Under the pieces are notes generated by a model that searched no databases, was not told the origin of the DNA, and saw only the letters and a list, made by a program, of their open reading frames with translations. From Diplonema japonicum (taxonomy: Eukaryota > Protista > Euglenozoa: Diplonemea), in NCBI GenBank assembly GCA_964019335.1, contig OZ025710.1:310001-374000 (forward strand): DNA of 64,000 bases. Reading direction: 5' to 3'. The position numbers and the translations under genes were made by a program. Shown piece by piece: positions 2,830 to 28,009 of this stretch (position 1 is the stretch's first letter; every line of letters begins with the position of its first letter).

Positions 2830-3543
2830 TATTGATCAAAGGTCTTGAAAGGAAAGAGGGATTTTTTTTTTTTGCTAGAGTTCTTTCCCCCCCCCCTACT
2901 TTTTTCTTCTCCCCCTGTTCCTCTCAGAAGAGCAATTATAGATCGAATATATATATATTTTTTTTAGATGTTCAGTTGATACACATGTTTTCTTTTTCTT
3001 TCTTTAGGAAAAGTTGAAGTTCGGCCCCGAGAGTCCTATTCATATGAAAAAAAAAGCTGGATTTTACTCCCTCTTTTCCCAGCCTGATGTTGTTTCCCCT
3101 CTTTTTTTTTGCAATAGTTTCTATTTGTCAATTCTAGGGGGGAAGAGGAAAAAAAATAAATGAACGAAAGAACAGAGGAAAAAAAAAAGAAAGAAAAGTG
3201 CTGTATTTCTTCCCCCCTTGACCCATTGTTATCTTCTCACACTCCTTTTTTTTTTATTTTTCTTTTCCTTCATGTTTCTCCCTTCATTCCGTCCACTGTC
3301 TTATTAACCATATTTGTCTACTCCTGTTGTGTGCGGCTTTCCACCACTTTTTTTTTTACTTCCCCACACAGATTTTGCTTTTTTCATTTTGTTTTCCCCC
3401 TGTATTTCTTTTGGAAAAATAAAAAAAAATTGGATAACGATTTTTTCTTTTTCGTGTTTTCTCTTCAAACACACCAAACAAACAGGAGAAGGGGAGGGGG
3501 GAGTGGCGGGTGGAGGGAAGAAAGTAGAAGAAAAATAAAAGAA

Positions 3544-6500: not shown

Positions 6501-9500
6501 TAAAGACAAGCCGCAGATCAAAATTGTGGATGAGATTCGGATGCAGCTGCAGGACTTCTCGCCGTTGGTGCCAATCCTGCAATCCTTACGCAACCCGGGG
6601 ATGAAGGAACGTCACTGGTTGGAGCTTGCTGGGAAACTACCGCCTGGGACATTGGACCAGGAAAACCCGGAAGACTGCATCCAAACTCTGCAAGACTGCC
6701 GCGACAGAGACCTCGTCAGCCATAAAGACACCATTGTCAGGGTGTGCGAGGTGGCAGCGAAGGAGTACGGCATCGAGTCGAGCCTGAACGAGATGTACGG
6801 GAAGTGGAAGGACGTGGTCTTTAAGATCGAGGCGTACAAAGAAACCAAAACGTACATGATGAAGGGCTCCGAAGAGATCCAGGCACGCCTCGACGAAGAC
6901 GTGAACCTCACGCAACAGCTGTCCTTCTCACCGTTCAAGGGTCATTTCGAGGATCAGATCATGGACTGGGACAAGTCGCTGACCCTCATCTCGGAGATCT
7001 TAGAGCAGTGGTTGGATTGTCAACGAAACTGGCTGTACTTGCAACCTATTTTCTCAGCTGAGGATATTCAAGTCCAGCTTCCCGTCCTTGCGAAGAAGTT
7101 CGACAAGGTAGATAGGACCTGGCGGAAAATCCTAGGGCAGGCCTTTCAGAACCCTAATGCGCTCGACTTCTGCACAAAGTCTAACAAGCTTCTGGACCAG
7201 TTTATCGATGCCAACAAGAACCTTGAAATCGTGCAGAAGGGGTTGAACGACTACCTGGGGGAGAAGCGGCAGTTGTTCGGGAGGTTCTACTTCCTGTCCG
7301 ACGAGGAACTGTTGGAGATCCTGTCGCAGTCGCGGGACCCGCGCACCATCGACCTGCACCTCACGAAGCTTATGGAATTCATGCAATTCTTGGACTGGGG
7401 GGAAGAGAACGACGAGATGTTAGGATGGAACTCATCGGAAGGCGAACGTGTCTCATTTGTGAAGCCGATCTACCCCCAGGGCAACGTGGAGATCTGGTTA
7501 GGCGTCATTGAGACAGGGATGAAGGAAGGCCTCCACGAGGGCATCACTATTGCGAACGAAGAATACTCCAAGGTCCCAAGGAAAGAGTGGGTGCTCCAGC
7601 ATTGCGGGCAAGTGGTCATCGCGGTCACACAAATCTGGTGGACCATCGAGATCGAGGAAGCCCTCAACACAGACGGCCTCCCCGGGCTGGAACGGTACGC
7701 GCAGAAGTCAGAAAACCAGCTGCTGGAGCTTGTGGACGTCGTGCAGTCACCTTTGAACCGCATGCAGCGTGTCAACATGGGTGCCCTCATCACTATCGAG
7801 GTGCATGCAAAGGACACGGCAAAAACATTGTTTGCAATCAAAACCTCCAGCACCACCGACTTCGACTGGATCAAACAGCTGAGGTACTACTACGACACAA
7901 GTGACTCCCGCTGCAAGATCAAACAGGTGGATGCATTGTTTGTGTATGGCGGTGAATATCTTGGGAACACAATGCGTCTTGTGATCACTCCTTTGACCGA
8001 CAGGATCTATCTGACGTTGACAGGAGCTTTGGCGCTGTGCTTGGGAGGTGCGCCAGCAGGACCTGCAGGAACAGGTAAAACTGAGACGACAAAGGATTTG
8101 GCCAAAGCGCTGTCAAAGCAGTGCGTGGTGTTCAACTGCCAGGAGGGTTTGGACTTCCGCGCGATGGGGAAATTTTTCAAGGGTCTCGCGATGACAGGTG
8201 CGTGGGCGTGCTTTGACGAGTTCAACCGTATTGATGTTGAAGTGCTTTCCGTCGTCGCCCAGCAAGTCTCCGACCTCCAGGAGGCACTCAAGAGGCAACA
8301 ATACCGCATCGACTTCGAGGGCTCAGAGATCGTGGTGGACCCTACCCACGCTGTGTTCATCACCATGAATCCAGGGTACGCTGGGAGGACAGAACTCCCT
8401 GACAACTTAAAGGTGTTGTTCCGACCTGTGGCCTGCATGGTCCCCGACTACGCACTCATCGGTGAGATCAGGCTGTTCTCATACGGTTACAAAAACGCAC
8501 GCCCGTTGTCGAAGAAGATGGTGCAGACCTTCCAGCTATCCTCCGAGCAACTATCCACACAGGACCACTACGATTTTGGGATGAGGGCCGTGAACACCGT
8601 CATCACTGCTGCCGGCATCAACAAGCGAGAGAACCCTGATGGGGAGGAGTCGCTGCTGCTGCTCCGGTCGCTCCGAGATTCGAATGTTCCCAAGTTCCTT
8701 CACGCGGACATAGTGCTCTTCGAGAATATCATTTCCGATCTGTTCCCAGATGCTGTCCTCCCTGAGGCCGACTACGGCGCCTTGATGGAAGGCGTCCACA
8801 ACGGGATCACCAAGCTGGGTATACAACCTGTCCCCGAATTCATCGTGAAGGTCATCCAGTTGTTCGAAGTGACCGTTTTGAGGCACGGTCTGATGTTGGT
8901 GGGCCAGGCTGGGGGCGGGAAGACGATGAATTACAAAGTGCTGCAGCTCGCAATGACATCTATAGCGACCAAGCGTGAGAAGCAAGGTGGTGTGGACAAG
9001 GAGTCGAAGTACCAACGTGTTAGGACACATATCTGCAACCCTAAGAGTATCACGATGAACCAACTGTATGGTGCGTACGACGAAGCGACGCATGAGTGGA
9101 GCGATGGGATCCTGTGTGTGTTGTTCAGAAGAGCTGCGAAGGAGACGTCGGGTGCGAAACAGTGGGTCGTGTTTGATGGGCCCGTTGACGCATTGTGGAT
9201 CGAGTCCATGAACACAGTGCTGGACGACAACAAGAAGCTGTGCTTGGTGTCCGGAGAAATCATCCAGATGACACGCCACATGACAATGATGTTCGAGGTG
9301 GAGGACCTTGCCGTTGCCTCCCCTGCAACCGTCAGCAGGTGCGGGATGATCTTTATGGAACCAGCAACATGCACACCCACGAAGGACAGGACAGAGTCAT
9401 GGGTGCAACGTCTTCCAGACATGTACAAGCCACATGCAGAAACGCTCAGGGAGAAGAGTTTAATGTACATCCCCTCCTGCGTGGACTTTATCCGATGGAA

Positions 9501-12500
9501 CACAGTGGAGTACGTGCCCACCGTGGATAACAACCTGGTTGACTCTGCGTTCAGGGTCATGGACGGGTTTATAAATATTTTCGTGACGGCCCATGGTGGT
9601 GTTGGGGAGGTCTCTGAAGAGCTTCAGGCTGCCGTAGCATCCAGTTTGCTTCCTTACTTTTTCTTATCTCTCGTCTGGTCCATTGGTGCTAGCTGCAATG
9701 CCACCAGCCGAGTGAAGTTCTCTGAGTACCTCTCTGACCTCATGAAGCAGCACGAGGAGCCGATCCTTGCCGATCTCAGCATTGAGTACGAAGGCCGTCC
9801 TACCACTCTTTACGATATCTTCTACGAATGGGAGGACGACAAGGGTGCAGGGTGGAAACACTGGCTCCAGACAGAGCCGGCGCCGTCTATCGACCCCAAG
9901 CAGAAGTTCGGAGATCTCCTTGTCACTACCAAGGACACGGTCAGGAGCAACTTCCTGTGCAAGCTCATCGTCAAAACGAACAACCACCTGCTTGCAACAG
10001 GCCCTACCGGTACAGGTAAGACCCTGAACATGCAGAACATGATCATGAGTGGGCTTCCCGAGAAGTACTCTGGTGTGTCTTTCTTTTTCTTCAACATATC
10101 TTTTGTTTAAGGAATCTTCTTGACATTCTCTGCGCAAACGCACTCCAACCAATGCCAAAACACGCTGATGGGGAAATTCGAAAAGCGAAAGAACGGGATG
10201 GAGACCACCTCGTGGGGCCCGCCTGTTGGGAAGGTATGACAGCAGTCAATAATTAAAAAAAAGCTATTTTTTTCTCCCTAGATGTTTGTGATCTTCGTAG
10301 ATGATGCAAACATGCCCATCAAGGAACAGTATGGTGCCCAACCACCGCTTGAGCTGCTGAGACAGTTCCTGGACCATGCTGGATTCTACAACTACACACC
10401 GCCCATCAAGTACAATGAAGTTCTAGATGTTGTGCTGACGGCATCGATGGGCCCTCCCGGAGGGGGCAGGCAAAGTGTGACGAATAGATTCTTGCGCCAC
10501 TTCAACCACATATCCTTCCCTGAGTTGGACGATGAATCGATGACACTGATCTTCAGCACCATCATGCTGACAAGGCTCGCCGCCGTGGGCCTTGGCCAAG
10601 AAATTGTAGACACCATGCACGGGGTCATCTCCAGCACTATTAAGCTGTTCCACTTCGCGTGCAAAAATTTCCTTCCAACACCCAACCACGTGCACTACAC
10701 CTTCAACCTGCGAGACATTTCGAAAGTCTTCACACTGGTGTACGATGTGGAGCCAAGGGTGGTGCGGGACCAGTCTTCAATCGTGAAGCTCTGGATCCAC
10801 GAATGCATGAGGGTGTTCCGAGACCGGCTGATTTGTGAAGCGGATCGGAAAACACTGGACAGCCAGCTGGATGTCCTGTGCAAGGAGAATCTGAACATCG
10901 AAGGCGGGTTGTCCGAGCTGATCACGGCAGAGAGGCTTGTCTTTGGCGACTTTATGATCCCCGACATCGAGAGCCGTGTTTATGATGAAGTGACTGACAT
11001 GCAAGCGTTTGTCACAAGCATTTCACAATATCTGCAAGATTACAACGAGACGGCCGACTCCAGCAGGCCTCCGATGCCGTTGGTTGTGTTTTTGGACGCG
11101 GCGGAGCATGTTGCACGTGTGAGCAGGGTGCTGCAGATGCCGTCGGGCCATGCTTTGTTGCTGGGTGTCGGGGGTTCCGGTCGAAGGTCGCTTGCGAGAC
11201 TGGCATCGTACATCCCCGAGCTTGAGGTGTTCTACTTGGAGATCACGAAGAGCTTCACAATGACAGACTGGAAGGACTCGTTGAAACGGTTGATGACTGA
11301 TGCCGGTGTGGAGGACAAGGGACTTGTATTCCTCTTCACTGACACGCAGATTGTGAAGCCTATATTTATGGAAGACGTGGCCAACCTGCTCGGCACGGCT
11401 GACGTTCCCAACCTCTTCGATGGTCCTGACCTCGACAGCATCTACAGCTACTTCCGCAGTGTCTGTCAAGCCGAGCGGCTGCCCACTACAAAGCTCTCCC
11501 TCTACTCCCGCTTCATTAAGCAGGTCAAACGCAACCTCCACATCGTCCTCGCATTCTCCCCACTCGGCGAGGCCTTCCGCACCCGCATGCGTCAGTTCCC
11601 TTCTCTCTCCAACTGCTGCACCATTGATTGGTACGACCCATGGCCTGCAGAGGCCCTTGCATCCGTAGCCAAGGTCACACTCCAAAAGGCAAACTGCATC
11701 GTTGTGAACCCAGACAATCCAGAAGCGGCAACTATTGAGGTATGTTGTTTGTTTTGAATAAGCACATGCGATGTTTCTTTGCACAGGAAGGCGTCAGCAA
11801 CATGTTCACGTTCCTTCATAGATCGGCGACGGATCTCACTGAGCAGTTCTACACGGTATGGATAAAAACAAAGTAATCAAAAATACAAACAGGAGCGGAA
11901 GAGAATCACGTACGTGACCCCCACCTCCTACTTGGGGTTGTTGCAGGCCTTCCAGAGAATGCTTGCCGAGAAAAGGGAAGAAACAACTCAGAACAAACAG
12001 CGGCTTGTCAACGGGCTGAGCAAGCTGAAGGTGACGGAGGACGGTGTAGCGGAGTTGCAGGAGAAGCTGCAAGCAAGGCAACCCGAGCTTGTGAAGACGC
12101 AACAAGAGGTGAAGGTGATGATGGAACAGATCCAAGTCGATAAGCAAGAGGCAGATGTGGCAAGGAATGCGGCAAAGGGGGAAGAAACGGCTGCCAGTGA
12201 AAAGGCTGCTGTCTGCGAGGGAATCCAGAAACAAGCGCAGGCTATGCTTGACGAAGCTTTGCCTGCACTGGACGAGGCCAAGAAGGTACTACGTACCTTG
12301 AAGGTCAGAGATTTGCAGGAAGTTGGGAAGTACGCTGCGCCCCCCGGCGGGGTGTTGTTAGTTATGCAAGCCGTGCTGACGATCAAGGGCAGGGTGGCCA
12401 ACAAGGTTAATAAAGGTGGACAGAAAGAGGAAGACTGGTGGGGCCCTGCTAGGGAAGAGCTCAGAGACGCTTCCGGCCTTCACGAGTTCATGTTGAACTA

Positions 12501-15500
12501 CGAGGCAGACAAGATGTCGAAGACCCTCATCGGGCAACTGCAGAAGTTCATTGACGACGATAAGTTCAGCCCACTAGAAGTGAAGAAGGTCTCGGTGCCT
12601 TGCGCGGGAATGTGTCAGTGGGTGCATGCTATGTTTAAGTACTACCACGTGAATCTTGAAGTGGAACCCAAGCGACGAGAGCTGGAAGGAGCAGAGAAGG
12701 AGCTGAAAGTGGTGCAGGACGCGCTCAGTGTGACAAGGAAGAAGCTTGACGCTGTTGAAACGAAAATCGCGGAACTGCAGTCGAACTTCGACGCGGCAAT
12801 ATCAAAGCAGAAGGACCTGCAAGCAGAGGTTGCACAGACCGAGGCAAGGCTTGACCGTGCAGGGCGTCTAATCGACGGGCTGTCAGGTGAGAAGTCTCGT
12901 TGGATTGACTTAGTGTCAATGTACGAAAGCCAAGAAGAGAACGTTCTTGGGGACGTGCTCATAGCTTCAGGGTACGTGGCGTACCTCGGGCCGTACACGG
13001 CGGAGTACCGGCAGAGCATTGCGTTGAGGTGGATTCCGCAGCTCGACAAGCTTGGGTTGAAGCACAGCGAGAACTGCAGTCTGCTGTCGTGCTGTGCCGA
13101 CCCCGTCCAGATCCAGCAGTGGAACATCCAAGGCCTGCCTTCAGACAACCTCTCCACAGAGAACGCAATCATTCTGAGCAAGAACGCAAGGTGGCCGTTA
13201 ATGATCGACCCGCAGGGGCAGGCCAATGTGTGGATTAAGAACATGGAAGGCAAGGACGTGAGTGGACGCCCGCCGCTGGTGACGTGCAAGGTGTCCGACC
13301 CGAAGTACGCACAAGCGTTGGAAGGGGCCATCCGTCTAGGTGCAACATGCTTGCTTGAAAACGTTCAAGAGGATTTGGACCCGCTTCTGGAGCCCGTGCT
13401 GCTGACACAGACATACTTGGCAGGCTCGACACTGATGATGAAGCTGGGCGAAAACGCGATCCCTTACGACGACAGGTTCAAGCTCTTCATGACGACAAAG
13501 CTGCCAAACCCACACTACACACCAGAGACTTCTGTGAAGGTGTCATTGTTGAATTTCTTCATTACGCCTGGCGGTTTGGAGGATCAGTTGCTAGGAAAAC
13601 TTGTTGGTAAGGAACGGAAGGACCTCGAAGACCAGAAGAACAGCCTGACACAGCAGAACGCGGCAATGATGAAGGAGCTAAAAGAGCTGCAAGCGCTGAT
13701 CCTGCGAATGCTGCAGGAGTGCGAGGGTGAGATCCTCGACAACGAGGAGCTGATTGAAACCTTAGAAAAAAGTAAAGTAAAGTCGGCAGAGATCAACACT
13801 GCGGTAGCAGAGGCTAAGAAGACAGAAGTTGTTATTGACGAGACGCGTAACAAGTACCGTCCTGTGGCATTCCGAGCAGCGATACTGTTCTTCTGTGTGG
13901 CGGGATTGGCTGCGGTTGACCCTATGTACCAATACTCTCTTCAGTGGTTCATGAATATGTTTGTGAATGCAATTGACAAAGCAGAACAGGACTCTGTTCT
14001 TGAAACCCGTCTCAGTAACTTGATCGAGTATTTCACGTACAGCTTCTACACGAACGTCTGCAGGTCGCTCTTTGAACGGCACAAGCTGATCTTCTCATTC
14101 TGTCTCACGGTGGCCATCATCCGTCCTGAAGGAAAGGTGGACCACAATCTCTTCCGATTCTTCCTCACTGGTCCCACAGGACAGGGCGGCAACGCCCCCA
14201 ACCCTGCCCCCGATTGGGTCACGGAAGTGGTTTGGAACGACATCCAATTTATTTCAAACAATTTGGAGGCGTTCAAGGGGTTCGCAGAGCACTTCGCCAA
14301 CGAACACCACCACTACAGGAAGGTTTTCGACAGTTCGGAGCCGCACCTGCAAGCGATGCATGAACAGTGGGAGGAAAAGTTCGACCCGTTCATGAAGTTG
14401 GTCTTCTGCAGGGTCCTACGGGCTGACAAGGTCATCCTAGCCATCCAGCAATATGTAACCACATACCTGCCTGAGAAATACATAATCGCGCCCACCTTTG
14501 ACTTAGAATCGTCTTATAAGGACTCCGATCCTGCGACACCATTGATCTTCATCCTCTCGACGGGTGCTGACCCGATGGACGAGCTGCAGAAGTTCTCGAC
14601 AAAAATGCGGATGAACAACAAAATGCACCCTATCTCGCTGGGGCAGGGACAGGGTCCAAGAGCGCAGGCTTTGATGGCATCGGGTATCGAAAGAGGCACA
14701 TGGGTGGTCCTGCAGAACTGCCATCTGGCAACGTCGTGGATGCCCAAACTGGAGACGATAGTGGAAGGTTTCAACCCGGAGACGATGAAGAGGGAGTTCA
14801 GGTTGTGGCTGACTTCGATGCCCTCAAAAACCTTCCCTGTAAGTGTGCTGCAAATCGGGGTCAAGATGACCAACGAACCACCAAAGGGGCTGCGGGCAAA
14901 CCTCACGAGGAGCTACATCGGGTTTTCGGAAGACTTCCTGGAAGGGTCGAGCAAGCCCGACGAGTTTAAAAAACTACTGTTCTCGCTGTCATTATTCCAC
15001 GCCATCATCCAGGACAGGCGAGGGTACGGGTCGCTGGGCTTCAACATACCTTACGAGTTCAACGACTCGGATCTGAAGTGCTGCAACAGACAGTTGGACA
15101 AGTTCATCAACATGTATGACGAAGTACCCTTCCCGGTCCTGCACTTCTTGACTGGACACGTGAACTATGGAGGAAGAGTGACAGACGACTGGGACCGAAG
15201 GTGCTTGATGACACTTCTCGACGACTATATGGCTGAAAAGGTTCTTGAAAACGGTTACCAGTTCAGCCCGTCAGGAGTATACGAAACATTAACTGGCACG
15301 AACCGCACAGCCTATCTGGACTACCTTGAAACACGTCCTTTGAATGCAGCACCAGAAATGTTCGGGCTACATGACAATGCAGACATCACCTCTGCAAGGG
15401 CACGCACCTTCAACTTCCTTGAAACTGTGCTCCTTATGGAGTCTGGCGGGTCCTCTGCAGGCGGTAAATCGCGAGAGGAAATTCTTGCCGAAACTGCCTC

Positions 15501-16427
15501 TGATATCCTTTGCAAGATCCCACCCGAGTTCAACGTCAGGGAGGTCCAAGCCAAGTACCCTGTCACCTACAAAGAGTCCATGAACACGGTCCTTGTACAA
15601 GAAGCAGTGCGGTACAACAAGCTGCTTAAGATCTCTGCTCGCTCGTTGAAGGACTTCACCCGGGCGCTCCGTGGTGAGGTGGTGATGGCTGCTGACTTGG
15701 AGGAGCTTGGCAACTCTTTGTTTGTCAACCAGGTGTGAGGGAAAACTTTAAAAGAAAGAAAAAAAAAAGAAAAAAAAAATACCCAAGGTCCCAACAAAAT
15801 GGGCGTCTGCAGCATACCCATCGTTGAAGAGCTTGTCGGATTGGGTGAAGGATCTGCTGTGTCGGGTTAAGTTCATCAAGGTTTGTTTGTTTTTTCTCGA
15901 ACACAAAAATAAAATTAAAAAAAAAATTAATAATAATAAAACAGGACTGGTACGAGCAAGGGCACCCTGTGGTGTACTGGTTGTCTGGATTCTACTTCCC
16001 GCAGGCATTCATGACAGGTAGCAAGCAGAATTTTGCTAGAGCAATGCAAATCTCCATTGACACTGTTTCCTTTAACACCCTAGTACTGGCCGAGGACAAT
16101 CCCGATAAGCGTCCTGAGCATGGAACCTACGTGAACGGTTTGTTCATGGAGGGTGCAAGGTGGGACAAGTCGCAGAGCAGCGTCATTGAGTCTCGCCCCA
16201 AGGAGCTTTACACTACCATGCCTCCCTTCTGGTTCCAACCTGTGCAACATCGTAAACCTCCAGAAAGCCAGTACCACTGTCCCTTGTACAAAACACTGAC
16301 CAGGGCAGGCACGCTCTCAACGACTGGGCACTCCACGAATTTCGTAATGACACTTGAGATCCCTATTGACATAAGCGAAGCTCACTGGATCAAACGAGGG
16401 GTTGCGTGCGTGCTCGCACTGACTTAG
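3544..16427 (+). CDS. DNAH1: Axonemal inner-arm dynein heavy chain, DNAH1-like, ~4197 aa; exons 3544-10072, 10112-10233, 10282-11739, 11787-11855, 11893-15732, 15788-15880, 15945-16427
   Basis: P-loops GPAGTGKTET, GQAGGGKT, GPTGTGKT, GVGGSGR; CFDEFNR; C-terminal HWIKRGVA. N-terminal LPLEIFDNTSFDPRTPDEW is typical of DNAH1. Six GT-AG introns restore frame and conserved text (FSAQT..WGPPVGK-MFVIFVDD; YVTPTSYL; AAYPSLK; VYWLSGF). Start taken at the A-tract-preceded ATG 3544. Confidence 0.93.
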
Positions 16428-16719
16428 GATGAATGGAAGAGAGAAAAGGAAACAAAAAAAAAAGTTTTTTTTTTTTTTAAACCGACCTTGTTTATTACCA
16501 TTAAGTTTAACATTTTTTTTTCCATGTTTATTTTCTTCTTTTTTTTTGTGGGGGCTTTCATTTTTGTGTATTTTTTTAGTTCTCCTCCCCCCCCTTTTTT
16601 TTTCTTTCGAGATCTTCCCAGGGATCTCGTAGAAAAATTAAAATTAAAAAAAACCCCCGCTGGTAGTTTCAGCAGAAAATAAAAAAGAAGGTGGAGGGGA
16701 GGGGGGGGGGGGGAGACCA

Positions 16720-19083
16720 ATGCGCAGCTACAGCAAATCAAAAGTTCATGTCCCAGCTCCGCCGGATATGGAAAGGTTGCGGAAGGCTGCCAGCAAGGCG
16801 AGGCTGATCTCTGTAAGGATGAAGGCGAGCCAGAACACCGACGAACTAAAAGGAGAAGTCCGACAAATGGAAATGATGGTGTCCGGCGCTGTAGCAATTA
16901 TCCAATGCGTATACCTTCACGTCAGCGTGAGCTCGCTGGAGATGCAAGAAAGATGGACCATCGAGCTGTTCGAAGAAGAACAACGAGCCATCGTTTCAAA
17001 CATGACAAGCACGATGACACAACGGTGCAGATTTGACGGGTTCATCGCAGAACTACACACCAGGGGACAGTGCAAAATACGCGAAAACTTCCAACCACTT
17101 CTCGAGGCCAACCCGACATCTTTCTCCAGGCTCGTCTATTGCAGCGCTGCACAATTCGGGTTCACAGAAGACATCCTTACCCGTATCACCACGAATGCTA
17201 TCCAGAAAAACCAAAAAGTAAACATCACAGGCCACATTCTGTACGTCCCACCGTTTCTCTTCCAGGTTCTGGAAGGCACCGCCGAGAATGTTTGCAGTCT
17301 GTTCGAAACGCTGTGGGCTGACGACAGGCACCACACTGTTTCGTTGGTGAGCTTTACCCGCGTGCAGACGAGAATATTTCAAGACCATATGAAGTGCACG
17401 GTGATCCACCCCTTCCACGGTTTGAAGGGGTCGGTGGTGGTCTCGATATTCCAAAACGTCGGGCACCGGTTCATGACAAAACAAATGTACGCTAGTAAAA
17501 CCCGCGACGTTCCCTGGCGACACACCCGAACGGTTCTTGTCATCGTGTTCGTCTTTTCATTCCAACCCGAGAAACTCGAGGTGGTACTGGACCCCGTCAT
17601 CGAACTGATCCGAAAGTACAAAGGCGAAATTCTTAAAGCAGACGCCGACCGTATAACAGCAGTTTCGGAGGATACCAACACGAACTTCGTTGAGCTCGGT
17701 ACGGCGGTCTGTGATGCGGTTAGCACGCTGATAACAGATTGCAGGTTCGGCCTCGCAAAGGGTAGGATCACTAGAGTGCCGATTGAGTCAAGGATACACG
17801 TGGGCACATGTATCGATCGTGCCACGTTTCTCGCTTCGAAGGCGAAGAATTCGCAATGGTCGGCCATCGTTGACACGTCAGCTTCATACCTGCTACCGCA
17901 GCCTCGGAGCACAGTGGACAGCGTGCCCAATGCATTCCTCATAGAGAAGGATTGCTTGGCATCAACGGTCACAGCAGCCATACCTTTAATCACATTTCCC
18001 GAACTGCCTGTTGTCGCATCGGAGTCTTTAGTCAGACTCACTTACGTGTCCTGCTCCAAGTCCATCGACATCGCCGCTGAGATGTACAACTTCATCCATT
18101 CAAAAAACTCTTTTATCGCTGACAAGATGATCCTCATGAAATCTGCGGACTGTCGGATCATCTTGCACATCATGGAAGGGACGCTTTCGGAGCTGCTGGA
18201 CCTCTACGCGCTGATACGGAAGAACAAGCTTCATAAATACTGCTTCCAGACATCGATAACGCCTTTGAAGGAGTTGATCTTTTCCTCAGAGTATGCTCCG
18301 CTGCAGGTTGTATCAGGGGATCATTGGTGTCCCATTCTGAAGGTGTTGATCAAGGTTGTGTCCAAAACGGACCACAGCTGCCCCGAGGTGCTGAAAAAGC
18401 TGGCTGCCGCGAACCAAGCACCGTCGGCGGTGGGGATCATCCCTATGGGGCGGCAGATTTTCGCAACGATAATCCCGGTGTGCTGCAGTATTCAAGGGCT
18501 GTGTGAATGTTACAGACAGCTTGTGGCGAAGCAAAACGAGACCTGGGTCGAAGTGATTGAAATTTCGCAAAGATTTGTCATTGCATGCCGGGAAGGCTAT
18601 ATCGTCAGGTTGATACACCTATGCGTGTATTTCGCAGGGATTATCAAGAAGATACCTCGGGCGTGGTGCGCTATTGGGGTTGCAACAGGCCGGGGTTTGT
18701 CAGGTCACATCGGGAAGGCAAATCCGATTTTCTTCATCTCGGGTGAGGCTCCAGAGCGTTCCCACACCATGGCTTCTTGGGTCATAAACAAGCCAAACTC
18801 CCATGGATCCTGCATGCTTATCTGTACGACTTCTGCTGCCCTTGCACGTCTCACCGCCCCCGAGGACACCATTGTGGGTATCGGCTCCATGGGGCTGCAC
18901 GCCCTTCCGACTTGGAATGTCTATTCTGTTGATCACCCTAACACCGATACAATCTCACGGAGTTTGTCGTCTACCTACTATCTTGTCCCGAGGCCGCTGG
19001 TGAAGTGCCTTCCGGAGGTTATGAGTGCAGACAATTACGTGCCAAAGGCACCATGGATGGTGCCTGGAAAAAAGAAGAAATAA
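16720..19083 (+). CDS. BLUF-domain flavoprotein with BLUF/cyclase-like/BLUF/cyclase-like (PAC-type) architecture, 787 aa
   Basis: BLUF1 RLVYCS..KNQKVNITGHILY..FQVLEG..V..LFETLWADDRH. Second BLUF-like RLTYVS..ILHIMEG..L..LY..I. Cyclase-like segments GEILKADADRI/CRFGLAKG and CAIGVATG..SGHIG..FFISGEA. Confidence 0.8.
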   Translation: MRSYSKSKVHVPAPPDMERLRKAASKARLISVRMKASQNTDELKGEVRQMEMMVSGAVAIIQCVYLHVSVSSLEMQERWTIELFEEEQRAIVSNMTSTMTQRCRFDGFIAELHTRGQCKIRENFQPLLEANPTSFSRLVYCSAAQFGFTEDILTRITTNAIQKNQKVNITGHILYVPPFLFQVLEGTAENVCSLFETLWADDRHHTVSLVSFTRVQTRIFQDHMKCTVIHPFHGLKGSVVVSIFQNVGHRFMTKQMYASKTRDVPWRHTRTVLVIVFVFSFQPEKLEVVLDPVIELIRKYKGEILKADADRITAVSEDTNTNFVELGTAVCDAVSTLITDCRFGLAKGRITRVPIESRIHVGTCIDRATFLASKAKNSQWSAIVDTSASYLLPQPRSTVDSVPNAFLIEKDCLASTVTAAIPLITFPELPVVASESLVRLTYVSCSKSIDIAAEMYNFIHSKNSFIADKMILMKSADCRIILHIMEGTLSELLDLYALIRKNKLHKYCFQTSITPLKELIFSSEYAPLQVVSGDHWCPILKVLIKVVSKTDHSCPEVLKKLAAANQAPSAVGIIPMGRQIFATIIPVCCSIQGLCECYRQLVAKQNETWVEVIEISQRFVIACREGYIVRLIHLCVYFAGIIKKIPRAWCAIGVATGRGLSGHIGKANPIFFISGEAPERSHTMASWVINKPNSHGSCMLICTTSAALARLTAPEDTIVGIGSMGLHALPTWNVYSVDHPNTDTISRSLSSTYYLVPRPLVKCLPEVMSADNYVPKAPWMVPGKKKK

Positions 19084-19300
19084 CAAAAAAAAAATCTTTT
19101 TTTTCTTTCTAGAAAAAAGTTTTGGTTTTGTTGTCTCTCCCCCCCCTCCCCCACCCCGCGACTATCGTGTAAAAATGTCCTTGAATAGTTTTACCAAAAA
19201 AAGAGAAAAAAAAACAAGTTAAATGCGCCGAGCCATTAAGAAAACAGGATAGGGGGATAAAAACCAACCTTAATATGTAATTGGTGAAGAAAGAAGAAGC

Positions 19301-21118
19301 ATGCAAACACGTTCGATAGAAGTCCTAAAGGGGACAAGATTGCCGGAGTATGAACACCGTTCAGGCTGCTCACGGGTGCACCACAGCATGGTGAGTTTCA
19401 GGAGGAGTGTGTACCTGTATGGGGGACACGAAGCGGAGAGTGGGATAATACAGCAAAACGTTGTATGGAGGTACAACCTGGAAAAAAGCAGATGGAGCAG
19501 CTTGGGAGGGGTCGTAGCGGGAAGAAAATACGTGAAACGAGAAGGCCACACAGCAGTGATTTGGAAGACTGGGATGTACGTGTTCGGCGGCCACCGAGGG
19601 GTGTCCTTCTGCAGCGATATGCAAAAATTCGATCTCGAGTCCTTTAAGTGGGAAAAAGTAGAAGAGACAAAGGGTTCAGTGGTGGCTTCGCCACGGTTCG
19701 GCCATGCCGCCCTTGTTTACGACGACAAGATGTGGGTTGCTGGTGGGTTTTTGAAAGAGGACGCACCATCTGTTGTGGCATGCTTTTCGCTTTTATGGAA
19801 AACCTGGCACCACGTGGTCACACCAGAGTCCATCAGAACCAACGCGCACTCGCAGCCGATCATGGCGCAGCATGACGGTAGGCTGTACATTATCGGATTG
19901 TACCAAGAGGCAAGCCGATCCACAGACATATGTATTTACCACATTACAACCGAGCAGTGGATTGAGATCAAAGGGTCTGGGATACCCCCAGATTCGCTGC
20001 ATTCTTGCGGTCACATGTACACCTCACCCGTGCATCATCCGCGAGCTCGGAAGCTTTACGTGTTCATGGCGTCGTCGAAGCGGAAAACCTCATTTGGGTC
20101 CGACATGTCTGTCGCTGCGCTGCCGTATTGTTTGGATATTAGCTCCATGGTGTGGTCGCTGGTGAGGATCGAAGCGTTCAGGCTTCCAAAGACAACACCC
20201 ACGACGGCGTATGACGTGAAGTTCACGACCTGTTTGGTGCAGGACAGGATCCTTATCAATGGGGGCATCGGGTCCGAACACTTCTTCGCAGCGTTCACAC
20301 CCGCTGTTGAGGTTGTGAAGGAACCCACCCCACCTGCAAAGGTCTTGGTATCTCAACCGCACCAAAGGAGGTCCGGGAGGCCATCAGAAGAGGACACACA
20401 GTTCGATGTCGGGTTTGTGAAGGAAATCACGTATCCAGCCACAGTGTTCGTGGACTCGTCAACCCCTGTGCTGAAGTTAGGAACACCAGAGGAGATACGA
20501 GCCTGGCAAGACGCAACCTACGCACAGCAACGGGGGTGGCTTTTAGCTCAATTCAACGATGTGAAGCAAGATGACTCCCGCCGAAAAATTGCGGAAAAAC
20601 CCGTCAAGCCAGACACAGTGGATGCGAGCAGGTTCGCTGCAGGACGAACAGCAAGGGGAATGCGGCAAACAGGAGAGCAGCTGCAGGAAAGGTTTCAGAA
20701 ACCACGAGTCACGTCCCAGTCATCTGACAAAGACATCCTGGGCATGAAGCTTGGCATGGGGCTGTTCGTGAAACGATCAGATATAACACTTCCCTGCGAC
20801 AAAGCCATCGTGCCGAAAAAACCTGCAACGCTGTGGGGCGGATTGAGGAGGGTGTTTGCAGGTGCGGTTGGCTTCAAAGCAGCAACTTCAACTGAACAAA
20901 GATTGAAAAGGGCATCTTTGTTCCCAACCACGGACGCAGCGGACGACCTGGACCCACCCCCCACAAAGCAGGGGGACATCAGCGAGGTTGTGACCTCGGT
21001 TGCGTTCTTCATTGATTCGGTGAAGGATCTCGGGCTCATACCGCAGCCCCCCACCGGCCATGAGCTCCAAAAAGCAATACAAACATCTGCAATATCACAT
21101 GACCCTCATCTGCTGTAA
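19301..21118 (+). CDS. Kelch-repeat protein, 605 aa
   Basis: Repeated R.HH/REGH/RFGH...Y.FGG motifs (VYLYGG, MYVFGG, MWVAGG, ILINGG) in the N-terminal half; intronless ORF. Confidence 0.85.
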   Translation: MQTRSIEVLKGTRLPEYEHRSGCSRVHHSMVSFRRSVYLYGGHEAESGIIQQNVVWRYNLEKSRWSSLGGVVAGRKYVKREGHTAVIWKTGMYVFGGHRGVSFCSDMQKFDLESFKWEKVEETKGSVVASPRFGHAALVYDDKMWVAGGFLKEDAPSVVACFSLLWKTWHHVVTPESIRTNAHSQPIMAQHDGRLYIIGLYQEASRSTDICIYHITTEQWIEIKGSGIPPDSLHSCGHMYTSPVHHPRARKLYVFMASSKRKTSFGSDMSVAALPYCLDISSMVWSLVRIEAFRLPKTTPTTAYDVKFTTCLVQDRILINGGIGSEHFFAAFTPAVEVVKEPTPPAKVLVSQPHQRRSGRPSEEDTQFDVGFVKEITYPATVFVDSSTPVLKLGTPEEIRAWQDATYAQQRGWLLAQFNDVKQDDSRRKIAEKPVKPDTVDASRFAAGRTARGMRQTGEQLQERFQKPRVTSQSSDKDILGMKLGMGLFVKRSDITLPCDKAIVPKKPATLWGGLRRVFAGAVGFKAATSTEQRLKRASLFPTTDAADDLDPPPTKQGDISEVVTSVAFFIDSVKDLGLIPQPPTGHELQKAIQTSAISHDPHLL

Positions 21119-22744: not shown

Positions 22745-25316
22745 ATGACCGGCCAGACCACACAAAATCTTATTGAGTCCTTACAACTGAGTCCTGAGCA
22801 TCCCTCACCACCACCTTCACCTTCCGAAAACACGAGCTGCAAGACAAATCGAGACAAGGAAATGCCTTGCCTACTAGCTGATCCTATGGGCAGTATTCAA
22901 GTGCAGCAAGTCACACCACCGAGATCCCCTCCAAGGGGAGATGCTACCGCTGTGAGAGGAAACGCGGACTTGGGCTTTTTAAGGCTACCATCGGGTGATA
23001 TAAGGCCGAACTCCGCACCGGCTGTGATCGCGAGTATGAGTTGTTTTCATTTTCATTACATTTAATCTCATTACAGAACTACCATTGAAACCCTTAACAG
23101 GCCAGATACAAGATCTGGCAGGCAATGTGAATGGGAGCCCTCAAGCGGGAGGGGAGGCCGATTCAATTTTAGACTCGTATCTAGCACAGTCGGAGAAGGC
23201 TCCGGGAGGCCTGCTTTCAACACCGATACAAGGGTCCTTGGATTTCAACTTTCCAGTTGCCGGAGATTCTGGGGAGCAGCAGTCCTTTGTTTCCATCAGT
23301 CTAGAACAGGAACTGAGGAGAGACGCAGAGGCAAGGGGTAGGTCCCTGTCTCCAACACGGTCCACATTTGAACACGGTGTTCACATAGCACAGGTCTTCG
23401 AGAAACCAGAATGTAATATCATCAACGAGAGCAACCCAGCAGCGCAGGATTCCAATGAAACCAGCGACGATCTGTCGGTATGTATAGCAAAAACAAAAAA
23501 AAAAAGGGAAGAAGAAAAAAAAAAAAATAGAAACTCCGAGTCCAACAGCAGCAGCTTGCCACCCAACTTCGGTTCCTGCAAGAACAGGAATGGGCGATAC
23601 TCGACAAGAGGAGCGGATCGTCACTGGGAGAACAGCAGGGCAAGACGTCGGAGGGGTCGCAAAAAGAGGAAGAGGTGTATTTACAGGTAATTGAAATTGA
23701 GGGTAAAAAGAGAAAAAAAAACATAACGCACCGCAGGGCGTGGGGGAACGTGGGGGACCGATGACAGCATCATCTCCAGGGACGAGCCTGAACACCACCC
23801 CCTCTACACTTCCTTCTTCAGCGCCGATGGACTCCAAGCCCCCCCCAGCACTGAACCCACCGTTGTTGTCGCCAAGTGTGGTATGAGTATTTAAAAAAGA
23901 AGTTTTTAAAAAAAAAAAAGCTTGATTTGAACAAAAATCCGTACCCTCCTGGGCAGAGGTTGGACACGTTTGTGGGGCACATCGGGCTGGTTGCCAAAGA
24001 CCAACATGGGTTTGAGGAAACAACTTACTTTTTTTTTTTCTAAAAAAAAAAAAAATTCCCCCCCCAGATGCCGATTCCTGCAGAAGCTATGCGAGGAAGG
24101 CAACCAACGGGAAATCGCCATCATCTTCGACGAAGTGGTACCCTTAACGGGCGAGCTCATGGTCGATCCATTCGGGAACTACCTCATGCAGAGGTTGTGC
24201 GAGTACTGCTCGGAGACACAACGAACAGTGTTAATACAGAAAGTGACAGGAGAAATACCAGGGGTGAGCGCGAACATGCACGGGACAAGGGCGGTACAGA
24301 AAGTAGTGGACCATCTCCGCACACCCCAACACGTAGCCATTATGCGAGACGCCCTGTCAAAACACACTGTGACGATGGTGAAAGACCTCAACGGCAACCA
24401 CGTCATTCAGAAATGTCTGCAGAAGTTCGACTCTGCCAACAAACAGTTCATCTATGACGCCGTGACCAAGCAGCTACAGGACGTAGCAATGCACCGGCAT
24501 GGGTGCTGTGTTCTACAAAGATGCATCGATTTTGGAGCACCCGAACAAAAGATGCAGCTTGCAACTGAGGTAGTTGCCAATGCATTGATACTTGTGCAGG
24601 ACCCTTATGGCAACTATGTGGTGCAGTATGTGCTGGATATGGATGTCCCGGTGATTACGAAGAAAATGATTTCTAATTTCTGTGGGTCGTTGTGCGATCT
24701 TGCGATGAACAAGTTCTCCTCAAATGTCATTGAAAAGTGTATCAAGCTGGCCACACCCGACGCAAGGGCACCGCTTCTTGATGAGCTCTGCGACCCCACC
24801 GTGCTTCCCCGTATGCTTCAAGACCAGTTCGCGAATTACGTGGTTCAAACAGCATTGACAAAGGCTACTCCACATGAATTTAACATGTTGTGCCATGCCA
24901 TTAGACCCTTCTTGCATGTTATCAGGAACACACCACATGGGAAGCGTATTGAAATGAAGATCAACAGAAAACCTGAGCCGCCCACATCTCCCGGCACCAT
25001 GCCCTTGAAAAACCCTTCTCGAGGTGGGGGAGGGTCTCGAGGATCGCCTCTTTCCGCACCTAGCAACACCATACAGTACATTGCCGAGAAGGACCCTCGA
25101 GGGGAAAAGCGGGGTGCTGGGTACACACAAGGAAACCAGAATTGGAACTCTTCTGGCCCACCACCTGTGTCGGCTTACAATAACAATATTCCTAACATTG
25201 TTGCGCACCAACAAGCAAGGCCACCACGCAGACAGAGGTTAAGAGCTGACGCCCCTGCTTATGCTCCCAGAAAGTTAGAACTACATGCAGGTGTCCCACC
25301 TACAGCTCAGTGGTAA
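22745..25316 (+). CDS. Pumilio/PUF RNA-binding protein (Puf4/Mpt5-like repeat code), ~775 aa; exons 22745-23033, 23077-23477, 23531-23686, 23737-23880, 23921-24009, 24068-25316
   Basis: Eight PUF repeats after splicing: KDQHG|CRFLQK, DPFGNYLMQ, MHGTRAVQK, LNGNHVIQK, HRHGCCVLQR, DPYGNYVVQ, NKFSSNVIEK, DQFANYVVQ. Five GT-AG introns keep the frame open. The low-complexity N-terminal exons are less certain. Confidence 0.88.
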
Positions 25317-26521: not shown

Positions 26522-28009
26522 ATGCCCTTAAAACCTGGTAATAGACTGTTATATCGTGGTGTGACGAGGGTGAATGTGGTAAAAGAAAATTGGAAGGCAG
26601 CGGCAAGACGAAATGATTTGTACGGGCTAAGGGGTCGAAAAGCAGCGGAAAAAAAAGAATATGAAGCACCGCAAACACAAAAGAGCGTTTGGGGAGGTGA
26701 GTTCAAAGTGACGAAAAAACTAATGCAGTTCGACAGCAAACCAAAAGGCGTGATAAACACACAGATGGAGAGGAACACCAGAATTGAAGACTTAAACAAA
26801 GGCGGGTTCCAAGACAGCATCCACATAAATAAAAATAAAACACCCGAACAACAAACTATCAAAGCGAACCTGGCAAAGGACGCAGCGAGAAGGGTACGGG
26901 AATTCCTATTCAAAAACATCGAAAAAAACGAAGGCGCGCCGCCTGTGTCCGACATGTTATGCGAGCTCATCCTCAATCACACAGACAAGTCAAAACCAGA
27001 TGTGATACAGTCTATCAAAGCTGCGAACCACGAGATCCCTCTTGCCCTCTACCACCTTGACCAAGAACATCCTCGGCAACCACACTCCGGTGTTGTATCC
27101 GCAGAGATAATCCAGGACTATGGAGGTGCCGTGATCCGATTGGAGTGCGAGACAGTGGAACGATCACTCGGCGAAGGTTTCTTAAGACTGGCAAAACGGA
27201 TTTCAAGAACGGCAGCCATGCTACCCATGAACACACCCCCAGACAAGGTTCTTCAAGAGCTTCTGACCACCCAGCTGACGGACTCCGATGTTTATGTGTG
27301 CGATGAACTGATCAAAGCCTCAACATCGTGGGGTGAAACCGTTACCGTAACATCAGCCTCGCTGGTCCCTTCGCCTGAAGGGTCTCTGTTTGGGTGGTAT
27401 GTACACAACCCAAGGGATCTCTATCCTGGACAGGGTGCTGGCATTGCATTTGTGACGTTCTTGCTGTCCGACTCCGACACACAGCTCCTCGAACCCGAGT
27501 GGATGCAACGGCTGCAGGACACTATCCCCGCACGGCTTGCCGAGCACTGTCTGTTGGAACCGTTGTATCGAAACAAAGGCGGGAGGATACTCAAACAGAC
27601 GCTTGTATCGCCTCTCACACCAGCGGAGCACCGTAGGTACCCCACCTACACCCCTACCGTGTACGACTGGCTGGAGGATGAGATGTACCGTGCCAGGGTA
27701 ACTGCGTCGCGGTTCGGGCTTGTTTCCACGGTGCTCTCTCCTAACCCTGCGACGCGTACCTGGGTATCACTGTCCGCCGAGGCGCATCGTTACGATAAGT
27801 TCAGCTCTCGTACAGACCCACCACCGGCAGCAGACGGCAGTAGGAACATGCAGGCGGAAAACACCCGTATCAAAGCCGACCACAAAGAAGAGGAGCTGTG
27901 GTTCAACGAACCCGGACAGATGACAGAAACCGAGCTTCAGGAGGAGCAGAAAAACTCAAACGACGATGGGTTTGAGACAGACGACGAGCTGATGCGGAAG
28001 GGCGTGTAG
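26522..28009 (+). CDS. Divergent elongation factor Ts (EF-Ts)-like protein, probably mitochondrial, 495 aa
   Basis: EF-Ts landmarks in order: UBA-like helix bundle (LILNHT..SIKAANHEIPLALYHL), GVV..GAVIRLECET..F..LA, WGETVTV, FGWYVHN, LAEHCL, ILKQTLV, TVYDWL; basic N-terminus. Confidence 0.65.
   Translation: MPLKPGNRLLYRGVTRVNVVKENWKAAARRNDLYGLRGRKAAEKKEYEAPQTQKSVWGGEFKVTKKLMQFDSKPKGVINTQMERNTRIEDLNKGGFQDSIHINKNKTPEQQTIKANLAKDAARRVREFLFKNIEKNEGAPPVSDMLCELILNHTDKSKPDVIQSIKAANHEIPLALYHLDQEHPRQPHSGVVSAEIIQDYGGAVIRLECETVERSLGEGFLRLAKRISRTAAMLPMNTPPDKVLQELLTTQLTDSDVYVCDELIKASTSWGETVTVTSASLVPSPEGSLFGWYVHNPRDLYPGQGAGIAFVTFLLSDSDTQLLEPEWMQRLQDTIPARLAEHCLLEPLYRNKGGRILKQTLVSPLTPAEHRRYPTYTPTVYDWLEDEMYRARVTASRFGLVSTVLSPNPATRTWVSLSAEAHRYDKFSSRTDPPPAADGSRNMQAENTRIKADHKEEELWFNEPGQMTETELQEEQKNSNDDGFETDDELMRKGV

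What the first reader, a model, noticed from the sequence alone, without database searches (positions are those of the whole stretch)
16720..19083. Euglena-PAC-type BLUF photoreceptor with degenerate cyclase domains (pseudo-PAC) next to an axonemal dynein
Seen: domain order BLUF (~17121-17395), cyclase-like (~17520-17880), BLUF-like (~18028-18290), cyclase-like (~18450-18830), with PAC-like linker helices (PILKVLIKVV..PEVLKKLAAANQAP). BLUF1 keeps the photocycle Tyr (RLVY), Asn, Gln (FQVLEG) and Met. BLUF2 has Gln>His (LHIMEG). Both cyclase-like halves lack the F.DI metal Asp and the N..AR motif. Known: F1-C1-F2-C2 is the layout of Euglena photoactivated adenylyl cyclase alpha/beta. Inference: a blue-light sensor that signals without making cAMP (scaffold or regulatory subunit of an active PAC). 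It has an N-terminal coiled-coil segment and may belong to a non-photosynthetic flagellate.
Basis: partly seen in the sequence, partly recalled or inferred. Interest (0 to 1): 0.85.

Follow-up and report, generated by a model that had tools for sequence, protein, structure and literature searches.

The report
Light-sensor protein with dead cyclase domains
A marine non-photosynthetic flagellate (very probably Diplonema japonicum) encodes a protein built like the blue-light-activated cAMP-making enzyme of Euglena, with one sensor domain that looks intact and both enzyme domains lacking their catalytic residues, so it probably senses blue light without making cAMP.

Summary
Window 16720-19083 (+) is one intact 787-aa ORF with the order BLUF1, cyclase-like C1, BLUF2, cyclase-like C2.

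- **BLUF1** passes Pfam (79 bits) and keeps Tyr140, Asn164, Gln182 and Met224.
- **BLUF2** is degenerate (Gln to His483). Profile comparison and fold support it.
- **Whole protein** aligns collinearly with Euglena PAC-alpha-type proteins (99.6%, 576 columns).
- **Catalytic residues:** C2 has lost all seven canonical residues in every orthologue. C1 keeps only Lys306, Asp310 and Arg342. No complete active site can form.

The family has three further members, where named diplonemid. Two of them have lost the BLUF1 Tyr/Asn/Gln.

The genome has over 150 cyclase domains, only three BLUF loci, and no intact PAC. That argues against the "subunit of an active PAC" idea.

The neighbouring dynein is axonemal (DNAH1/DHC2 type). 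Adjacency in a polycistronic array is not evidence of a link.

This scan already reported a single-module sibling (BLUF plus dead cyclase) elsewhere in this genome.

Verdict: a new variant of a known kind.

The parts
16720..19083 (+). Whole gene: intact 787-aa ORF including the stop codon, single copy in the genome
16720..17109 (+). N-terminal region (aa 1-130): basic start, then a conserved stretch. No known family found and no structure predicted.
16873..16938 (+). Hydrophobic segment aa 52-73. Kyte-Doolittle 19-residue mean is 1.77 here and 2.30 in orthologue P0002. Candidate membrane anchor, unverified.
17116..17400 (+). BLUF1 (aa 133-227), with Tyr140, Ser142, Asn164, Gln182, His223 (Trp position) and Met224
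17401..17520 (+). Linker 1 (aa 228-267): predicted helix after BLUF1, 55% identical to the two full-length orthologues
17521..17904 (+). C1, a class III cyclase-homology domain (aa 268-395). Asp1 is Phe277. Lys306, Asp310 and Arg342 are kept. Asn is Asp366 and Arg is Phe370.
17905..18027 (+). Inter-module linker (aa 396-436): poorly conserved, low pLDDT
18028..18309 (+). BLUF2 (aa 437-530), degenerate: Tyr442 kept, Gln replaced by His483, no Met
18310..18444 (+). Linker 2 (aa 531-575): PAC-like helices and a ...PEVLKKLAAANQAP... motif that aligns to the PAC linker
18445..18954 (+). C2, a class III cyclase fold (aa 576-745). All canonical catalytic positions are replaced: Ile584, Glu614, Gln617, Ala651, Phe672, Glu679, Thr683. 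It is among the best-conserved parts of the protein (50% identity).
18955..19080 (+). C-terminal tail (aa 746-787). It carries the end of a conserved motif (Y-S-V-D-H-P..T-D..S-R-S..S-T-Y-Y-L..R-P-L) that begins about aa 736 in C2. Modelled as disordered. Possible docking or phosphorylation site (inference).

Best explanation
The gene encodes a non-catalytic descendant of the photoactivated adenylyl cyclase (PAC) architecture, so far seen in diplonemids.

Shown here:
- Four domains in the order BLUF1, C1, BLUF2, C2, collinear with Euglena PAC.
- Both C domains keep the class III cyclase fold.
- The residues needed for catalysis are missing: two metal-binding Asp on one domain, and Lys, Asp/Thr, Asn and Arg on the other. 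C2 has none of them. C1 has only Lys306, Asp310 and Arg342.
- BLUF1 has the full flavin photocycle set (Tyr140, Asn164, Gln182, Met224). BLUF2 does not.

Inferred mechanism:
1. BLUF1 binds a flavin.
2. Blue light rearranges the Tyr-Gln-flavin hydrogen-bond network.
3. The change passes through strand beta5 and the linker helix to an intramolecular C1-C2 pseudo-dimer.
4. The output is a change in binding to a partner rather than cAMP synthesis.

This is how the E. coli BLUF protein with a degenerate EAL domain, BluF/YcgF, antagonises its repressor directly. Candidate partners are members of the genome's very large class III cyclase family, or a protein that docks on the conserved C-terminal tail.
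For: - Architecture and homology: Pfam BLUF at 79 bits. Full-length hhalign to six true PACs at 99.6%, E 7e-25, 576 collinear columns. Domain-wise hhalign: F1 98.9%, F2 92-94%, C1 84%, and C1 95.7% against a broader cyclase profile.
- Dead sites. The C2 replacements are shared by all orthologues.
- Not a decaying gene: intact ORF. Orthologues are 44-46% identical, with C2 and the linkers among the best-conserved parts. The Lacrimia orthologue comes from a transcriptome. A run that carries a spliced dynein contig also has low-depth contigs on this ORF, and its three listed differences inside the ORF all fall on third codon positions (own arithmetic).
- Precedent for a BLUF domain with a dead enzyme domain that signals by binding: abstract of PMC3509220.
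Against: - No experiment here shows flavin binding or a photocycle.
- Two of the three other family members with BLUF1 sequence (P0002 and Lacrimia P0001) replaced Tyr, Asn and Gln of BLUF1. The conserved function of the family therefore cannot depend on light.
- Met224 is shifted by one residue and the Trp position is His.
- The AlphaFold models are low confidence (mean pLDDT 50-53). C1-C2 pairing was not modelled.
- No partner is identified.
- Diplonemids have no reported light response in the papers I could search.
Confidence: 0.55

Rival explanations
1. Light-independent scaffold. The BLUF domains are structural relics, or redox or flavin sensors. The protein does a job that needs no photochemistry, and the intact BLUF1 residues in this species are ancestral leftovers.
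For: Orthologues P0002 and Lacrimia P0001 lost Tyr, Asn and Gln of BLUF1 together, yet keep the rest of the protein, above all C2 and the tail. BLUF2 is degenerate in all members. No diplonemid light response was found in the literature searches.
Against: This species and a third one (P0004) keep Tyr, Asn and Gln (this one Met as well), along with the YxS, NITG, LEG and DxRH motifs. BLUF1 scores 79 bits in Pfam, which is typical of working BLUF domains.
Confidence: 0.25
2. Nucleotide-binding pseudo-cyclase. The C1-C2 pair still binds ATP or GTP without turning it over, at the remnant site formed by Lys306, Asp310 and Arg342. It acts as an allosteric sensor, possibly gated by light.
For: C1 keeps three phosphate-, metal- or base-contacting positions. 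A class III cyclase-like ATP-binding protein without cyclase function exists among solved structures and is among the fold matches (6yii).
Against: Lys306 is Phe in both full-length orthologues and Asp310 is Asn in Lacrimia, so the remnant site is not conserved. C2 offers none of the complementary residues.
Confidence: 0.1
3. Regulatory or scaffold subunit of an active PAC, as Euglena PAC is an alpha2-beta2 complex.
For: The architecture is the same as the PAC subunits. An active-type PAC with two BLUF and two cyclase domains exists in another diplonemid, Rhynchopus euleeides (P0006).
Against: This genome holds only three BLUF loci: this gene, a single-module protein whose cyclase-like part gets no Pfam hit, and a TEX47/LAX28 orthologue. 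A search with the Rhynchopus PAC finds no orthologue.
Confidence: 0.05
4. It is still a working light-activated cyclase that uses non-canonical residues.
For: The fold is retained in both C domains.
Against: No domain has both metal-binding Asp residues. The Asn/Arg transition-state pair is absent from both domains.
Confidence: 0.03

Closest known systems
Euglena photoactivated adenylyl cyclase (PAC alpha/beta; here P0070 = UniProt P84739, PAC-alpha-like of E. gracilis, and P0011 of E. stellata)
   Same: Same domain order F1-C1-F2-C2. Collinear profile alignment over 576 columns. PAC-like second linker. Both hosts belong to Euglenozoa.
   Different: In PAC, C2 supplies both metal Asp and C1 supplies Lys/Thr/Asn/Arg, giving one composite active site. 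Here those residues are gone. BLUF2 is degenerate, where PAC keeps the Tyr and Gln in both BLUF domains. An extra N-terminal region carries a hydrophobic segment. Identity outside BLUF1 is about 12-20%. Whether F1 and F2 correspond one-to-one with PAC F1 and F2 is unresolved.
bPAC / OaPAC (bacterial BLUF plus class III cyclase; PDB 5m2a, 4yus)
   Same: Each half of the protein (BLUF, linker helices, cyclase fold) finds these as its best structural match.
   Different: The bacterial proteins are single-module homodimers with complete active sites. This protein is a tandem of two modules with dead sites.
E. coli BluF (YcgF): BLUF plus degenerate EAL domain
   Same: A BLUF sensor fused to an enzyme domain that has lost catalysis and signals by binding a partner (PMC3509220 abstract). 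This is the closest functional analogy.
   Different: The output fold is unrelated (EAL, not a cyclase), and the protein is bacterial. The analogy concerns mechanism only. No homology of the output domain.
Single-module BLUF plus cyclase-like protein of the same genome (G000 contig C27, locus L001, 553 aa)
   Same: Same genome. BLUF passes Pfam at 82 bits. The region after BLUF gets no Pfam cyclase hit. An earlier agent of this scan read it as a dead bPAC-type cyclase with an EF-hand.
   Different: It has one module, not two. Only the BLUF domains align (30% identity), so it is a separate family, not a recent paralogue.
DYBLUP / MOT7 / TEX47 / LAX28 (dynein-associated BLUF protein)
   Same: A BLUF-type protein of flagellated eukaryotes. 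It is tied to inner-arm dynein f/I1 (PMC7909887 and bioRxiv 10.1101/782888).
   Different: It is a small protein of about 230-250 aa with no cyclase-like domains. This genome has its own orthologue elsewhere (L003, Pfam TEX47 at 42 bits). The gene studied here gets no TEX47 hit.

Membership tests
BLUF domain (Pfam PF04940) | Match to the family profile above the curated cut-off | tested here: met
   BLUF1 scores 79.4 bits against a cut-off of 25. BLUF2 alone scores 12.6 bits, below the cut-off, but reaches 92-94% in hhalign and has the BLUF fold in the model.
BLUF domain (Pfam PF04940) | Photocycle residues: Tyr on beta1, Gln on beta3, Met on beta5, and the flavin-contacting Asn | tested here: met
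   BLUF1 has Tyr140, Asn164, Gln182 and Met224, with Met shifted by one residue. BLUF2 fails: Gln is His483 and there is no Met.
BLUF domain (Pfam PF04940) | Flavin binding and a light-induced red shift | not testable with these tools
   Needs recombinant protein and spectroscopy.
Class III nucleotidyl cyclase catalytic domain (Pfam PF00211) | Match to the family profile above the curated cut-off | tested here: not met
   No PF00211 hit on the whole protein at E up to 1, nor on the C1 (aa 228-437) and F2-C2 (aa 421-787) pieces at E up to 10.
Class III nucleotidyl cyclase catalytic domain (Pfam PF00211) | Homology detectable by profile-profile comparison | tested here: inconclusive
   C1 is met: 95.7%, E 9.8e-9, 169 columns. 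C2 is marginal: 8.6%, E 0.004, but collinear over 147-170 columns.
Class III nucleotidyl cyclase catalytic domain (Pfam PF00211) | Class III cyclase fold | tested here: met
Class III nucleotidyl cyclase catalytic domain (Pfam PF00211) | Catalytic set: two metal Asp, substrate Lys and Asp/Thr, transition-state Asn and Arg | tested here: not met
   C1 has F277, K306, D310, R342, I359, D366, F370. C2 has I584, E614, Q617, A651, F672, E679, T683.
Euglena-type PAC (F1-C1-F2-C2) | Domain order, and collinear homology to PAC subunits | tested here: met
   hhalign of the family against six PACs: 99.6%, E 7e-25, 576 columns from F1 to C2.
Euglena-type PAC (F1-C1-F2-C2) | One complete composite active site across C1 and C2 | tested here: not met
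   Compare the PAC rows.
Euglena-type PAC (F1-C1-F2-C2) | Shared origin of the tandem duplication (F1 with F1, F2 with F2) | tested here: inconclusive
   In the BLUF tree the family's F1 and F2 group together (99/96). A tree with all F2 held as one clade is not rejected (AU p 0.43). F2 sits on a very long branch.
Euglena-type PAC (F1-C1-F2-C2) | Light-activated cAMP synthesis | not testable with these tools
   Needs an enzyme assay. The sequence predicts none.
DYBLUP / TEX47 / LAX28 | Match to Pfam TEX47 (PF24787) and small size | tested here: not met
   No TEX47 hit on this protein. The genome's TEX47 orthologue is locus L003.

The most novel reading that the evidence does not exclude
[quoted passage not shown] Instead it gates a partner by binding, for example a member of the genome's family of more than 150 class III cyclase domains, or a flagellar component. 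With the active-type PAC seen in Rhynchopus, this would also place the two-module PAC architecture before the split of diplonemids and euglenids, and so before euglenid photosynthesis.
Probability: 0.3. Interest if true: 0.75.

Novelty: new variant of a known kind. Interest (0 to 1): 0.6.

Why it matters
PACs are known as light-driven enzymes and optogenetic tools. I found no described PAC-type protein whose cyclase domains survive only as a fold. Such a protein would be a eukaryotic counterpart to the bacterial BluF principle, in which a sensor is kept and a dead enzyme domain is reused as a binding module.

It also points to blue-light sensing in diplonemids, a very abundant but little-studied marine group. 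The idea is directly testable with a single recombinant domain, and with tagging or knock-out in the tractable relative Paradiplonema papillatum, if it carries an orthologue.

Some orthologues keep the photocycle residues and others lost them. That natural contrast could be compared with habitat depth.

Tried and rejected
I could not check synteny of the orthologues, nor the full gene behind fragments P0003 and P0004.
- **Pairwise BLAST of the two halves** found no internal similarity. The duplication is visible only through profiles and fold.
- **ESM Atlas on the N-terminal 132 residues** gave no usable hit.
- **Second two-BLUF family without a Pfam cyclase** (Euglena EG_transcript_835 = P0124, P0117, Petalomonas P0008): only its BLUF1 aligns to this family. 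I rejected it as an orthologue.
- **BLUF phylogeny** could not resolve whether the tandem duplication is shared with Euglena PAC.
- **Paradiplonema subcellular proteomics paper** and its held supplements contain no BLUF entry. No localisation lead.
- **Very high read depth and 'joints' in the two flanking intergenic regions** come from low-complexity A-run/T-run tracts, not a mobile element.
- **Sequencing runs:** X2, X6 and X7 carry contigs that continue through the intergenic regions on both sides of the gene, as genomic DNA would, so they say nothing about expression. Only X1 shows splicing.
- **Dynein exons:** They were searched piece by piece by reference.
Full report
**What is there**

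Window 16720-19083 (+) is a single uninterrupted ORF of 787 aa. It lies in a run of same-strand genes typical of Euglenozoa. The assembly (G000) has 62.5 Mb in 132 contigs. This agrees with the published Diplonema japonicum YPF1604 genome of 62.30 Mb in 118 pseudomolecules (PMC13598402 abstract). Earlier agents of this scan gave the same identification. The only named orthologue comes from the diplonemid Lacrimia lanifica (EukProt EP01063).

**Domain by domain**

BLUF1:
- Pfam finds one domain, BLUF, at aa 136-222, with 79.4 bits against a cut-off of 25.
- Sequence searches of solved structures return OaPAC, bPAC, PixD and AppA through this domain.

Whole protein against true PACs:
- I aligned the family (this protein, P0002, P0001, and fragments P0003 and P0004; alignment A1).
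- I compared it with six true PACs that carry two BLUF and one or two Pfam-detectable cyclase domains. They include E. gracilis P84739 and an E. stellata PAC-beta.
- The result is one collinear alignment of 576 columns from BLUF1 to the end of C2, at 99.6% and E 7e-25.

Because BLUF1 could carry that score, I cut the family alignment into domains:

| Part | Result against the six PACs |
|---|---|
| F1 | 98.9% |
| F2 | 92-94% |
| C1 | 84% |
| C2 | 1% |

Against a broader profile of 22 cyclase domains (six from this genome and sixteen from the PACs), C1 reaches 95.7%, E 9.8e-9, over 169 columns. C2 reaches only 8.6%, E 0.004, though it is collinear over the whole domain.

**Fold**

I predicted the two halves separately, using only the four family sequences as the alignment, so that the fold was not imposed by PAC sequences. 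Confidence is low: mean pLDDT is 50 and 53, and domain cores are 60-79. The searches are nevertheless unambiguous.

- The C-half finds bPAC and OaPAC first (Foldseek E 3.4e-8, about 320-336 columns), followed by isolated cyclase domains.
- ESM language-model features of C2 also land on Guanylate_cyc clusters at 0.93. This is a lead only.
- The N-half finds bPAC/OaPAC at E 2.9e-14 over about 300 columns.

**Catalytic residues**

In the aligned Euglena and Rhynchopus PACs, C2 supplies both metal-binding Asp (in their ATD and GD motifs). C1 supplies the Lys, Thr, Asn and Arg. In this protein the positions read as follows:

| Canonical position | C1 | C2 |
|---|---|---|
| Metal Asp 1 | Phe277 | Ile584 |
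| Substrate Lys | Lys306 (kept) | Glu614 |
| Metal Asp 2 | Asp310 (kept) | Gln617 |
| beta4 Arg | Arg342 (kept) | Ala651 |
| Specificity Asp/Thr | Ile359 | Phe672 |
| Transition-state Asn | Asp366 | Glu679 |
| Transition-state Arg | Phe370 | Thr683 |

All seven C2 positions are non-catalytic in every orthologue, five of them with the same residue in both full-length proteins. Lys306 is Phe in both full-length orthologues, and Asp310 is Asn in Lacrimia. No domain has both metal ligands and none has the Asn/Arg pair. A working site cannot be built either way round. The pseudo-enzyme inference follows from the established catalytic mechanism of class III cyclases.

**BLUF residues**

An alignment with 30 BLUF domains and the family table show the following.

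- BLUF1 has Tyr140, Ser142, Asn164 and Gln182, together with the NITG, LEG and DxRH motifs.
- The Trp position is His223. Met224 follows directly, one residue closer than usual.
- BLUF2 keeps Tyr442 but has His483 for Gln and no Met.

Among orthologues, P0004 keeps Tyr, Asn and Gln. P0002 has Leu, Ser and Ile at those positions, and Lacrimia has Val, Gly and Ile. The photocycle is therefore optional for the family. This is the main argument for the light-independent rival.

**Family and genome context**

- Among 1.84 billion representative proteins, only two reach E 1e-30 or better: P0002 and the C-terminal fragment P0003. The N-terminal fragment P0004 follows at 2.7e-30. Lacrimia P0001 comes from the other database.
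- P0003 and P0004 come from contigs of identical length (1.39 Mb), probably the same contig.
- Identity to the two full-length orthologues is highest in the linkers, C2 and the hydrophobic-plus-acidic N-terminal stretch (46-55%), and reaches 62% to P0002 in the tail. It is lowest in C1 and the inter-module linker (32-36%).
- The gene is single copy.
- The genome has only three BLUF loci: this gene; a 553-aa single-module protein on contig C27 whose post-BLUF part gets no Pfam cyclase hit, already followed up by another agent; and a 228-aa TEX47/LAX28/DYBLUP orthologue on C99.
- The genome holds more than 150 Pfam-positive class III cyclase domains, many in tandem arrays.
- A search with the active-type PAC of the diplonemid Rhynchopus euleeides (P0006) finds no orthologue. 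An active PAC partner is therefore unlikely here.

**Expression**

- The Lacrimia orthologue is a transcript.
- Of the public runs, X2, X6 and X7 have contigs that run through the intergenic regions on both sides of the gene, as genomic DNA would.
- X1 comes from an organism that differs at about 3% of the laid positions. It carries a contig that skips two short GT..AG introns of the neighbouring dynein (15733-15787 and 15881-15944), so it contains RNA.
- X1 also has low-depth contigs on the ORF at 18066-18262 and 18688-19001.
- Its three listed differences inside the ORF (18846, 18912, 18939) all fall on third codon positions (my arithmetic).
- This is weak but consistent evidence for a transcribed gene under constraint.

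**Neighbours**

The upstream gene (3160-16427) is a dynein heavy chain in several exons. Outside Euglenozoa its best solved relatives are human DNAH1 and Chlamydomonas DHC2, which are single-headed inner-arm dyneins. "Axonemal" is correct. Gene order in these polycistronic arrays is not evidence of shared function (established knowledge).

**N-terminus**

I could not confirm a coiled coil. Residues 52-73 form a hydrophobic segment above the classical Kyte-Doolittle threshold (1.77 here, 2.30 in P0002). It is preceded by a basic stretch and followed by a conserved acidic one. A membrane anchor is possible but untested.

**How it most likely works**

Shown: the PAC architecture, the cyclase folds, the dead sites, and an apparently competent BLUF1.

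Inferred: light-driven rearrangement at Tyr140/Gln182 passes via beta5 and linker 1 to a C1-C2 pseudo-dimer. The output is altered partner binding, as in E. coli BluF, whose degenerate EAL domain has no activity but which directly antagonises the repressor BluR (PMC3509220 abstract).

I give this 0.55. The rivals are:
- a light-independent scaffold, 0.25;
- a nucleotide-binding sensor, 0.10;
- a subunit of an active PAC, 0.05;
- a non-canonical active enzyme, 0.03.

**Novelty**

Searches of the held literature found no paper linking diplonemids with BLUF beyond passing mentions in Euglena genome papers. They found none combining PAC with "pseudoenzyme". The kind (BLUF fused to a cyclase module) is known. 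A tandem PAC with both cyclase domains dead, in a heterotrophic marine lineage, is a new variant. The scan has already reported the single-module sibling in this genome, so the general idea of a light sensor with a dead cyclase in D. japonicum is not new to the scan.

**Limits**

- The structure models are low confidence.
- C1-C2 pairing, the membrane anchor, flavin binding and partners are all untested.
- The dynein exons were not joined.

Noticed in passing
window 3160-16427 (+): An inner-arm (DNAH1/DHC2-type) axonemal dynein heavy chain, split into at least six exons. Two mini-introns with A-rich bodies (15733-15787 and 15881-15944, GT..AG) are confirmed by a spliced contig in run X1. Two further breaks (about 10111-10281 and 11758-11913) are inferred only from ORF and Pfam continuity.
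   Followed up: partly
L003 (G000 contig C99, about 258272-258463, minus strand); ORF L003:1168-1857 (-): A 228-aa TEX47/LAX28/DYBLUP orthologue that still passes the Pfam BLUF cut-off (28.8 bits). Published work says the Leishmania and Trypanosoma homologues lack a clear BLUF domain. Its Tyr and Gln positions are Met and His, so it is probably not photoactive.
   Followed up: partly
G000, many contigs (for example C109, C28, C2, C103, C52): More than 150 Pfam-positive class III cyclase catalytic domains (291 first-look candidates), many in dense tandem arrays of ORFs of about 700-850 aa. This is a very large expansion of receptor-type cyclases.
   Followed up: no
protein P0006 (EukProt EP01061, Rhynchopus euleeides): A diplonemid transcript encodes an active-type PAC with two BLUF and two Pfam-detectable cyclase domains. 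Its catalytic residues are split between C1 and C2 as in Euglena. If it is not contamination, the PAC architecture is older than the euglenids. This genome has no orthologue.
   Followed up: partly
proteins P0124 (Euglena gracilis EG_transcript_835), P0117 (ENA contig), P0008 (Petalomonas cantuscygni): A second family of two-BLUF proteins of about 770-1140 aa without a Pfam-detectable cyclase, present in euglenids. Only BLUF1 aligns to the diplonemid family. These may be independent pseudo-PACs.
   Followed up: partly
window 16454-16479 and 19081-19108: Shortly after the stop codons of the dynein gene (about 25 bases on) and of this gene (directly) lies a similar A-run, short spacer, T-run palindromic tract. 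Pyrimidine and G/C homopolymer runs follow. These low-complexity tracts explain the roughly 100-fold excess word depth and the spurious joints in the read tables.
   Followed up: partly
window 4-2829, 19301-21118, 23970-25316 (+): Neighbouring genes: a myosin motor (its N-terminus lies outside the window), a Kelch-repeat protein (KLHDC2/KLHL20/DRC7-type), and a Pumilio-family RNA-binding protein. ORFs at 26522-28009 and 28084-30417 have no Pfam family.
   Followed up: no
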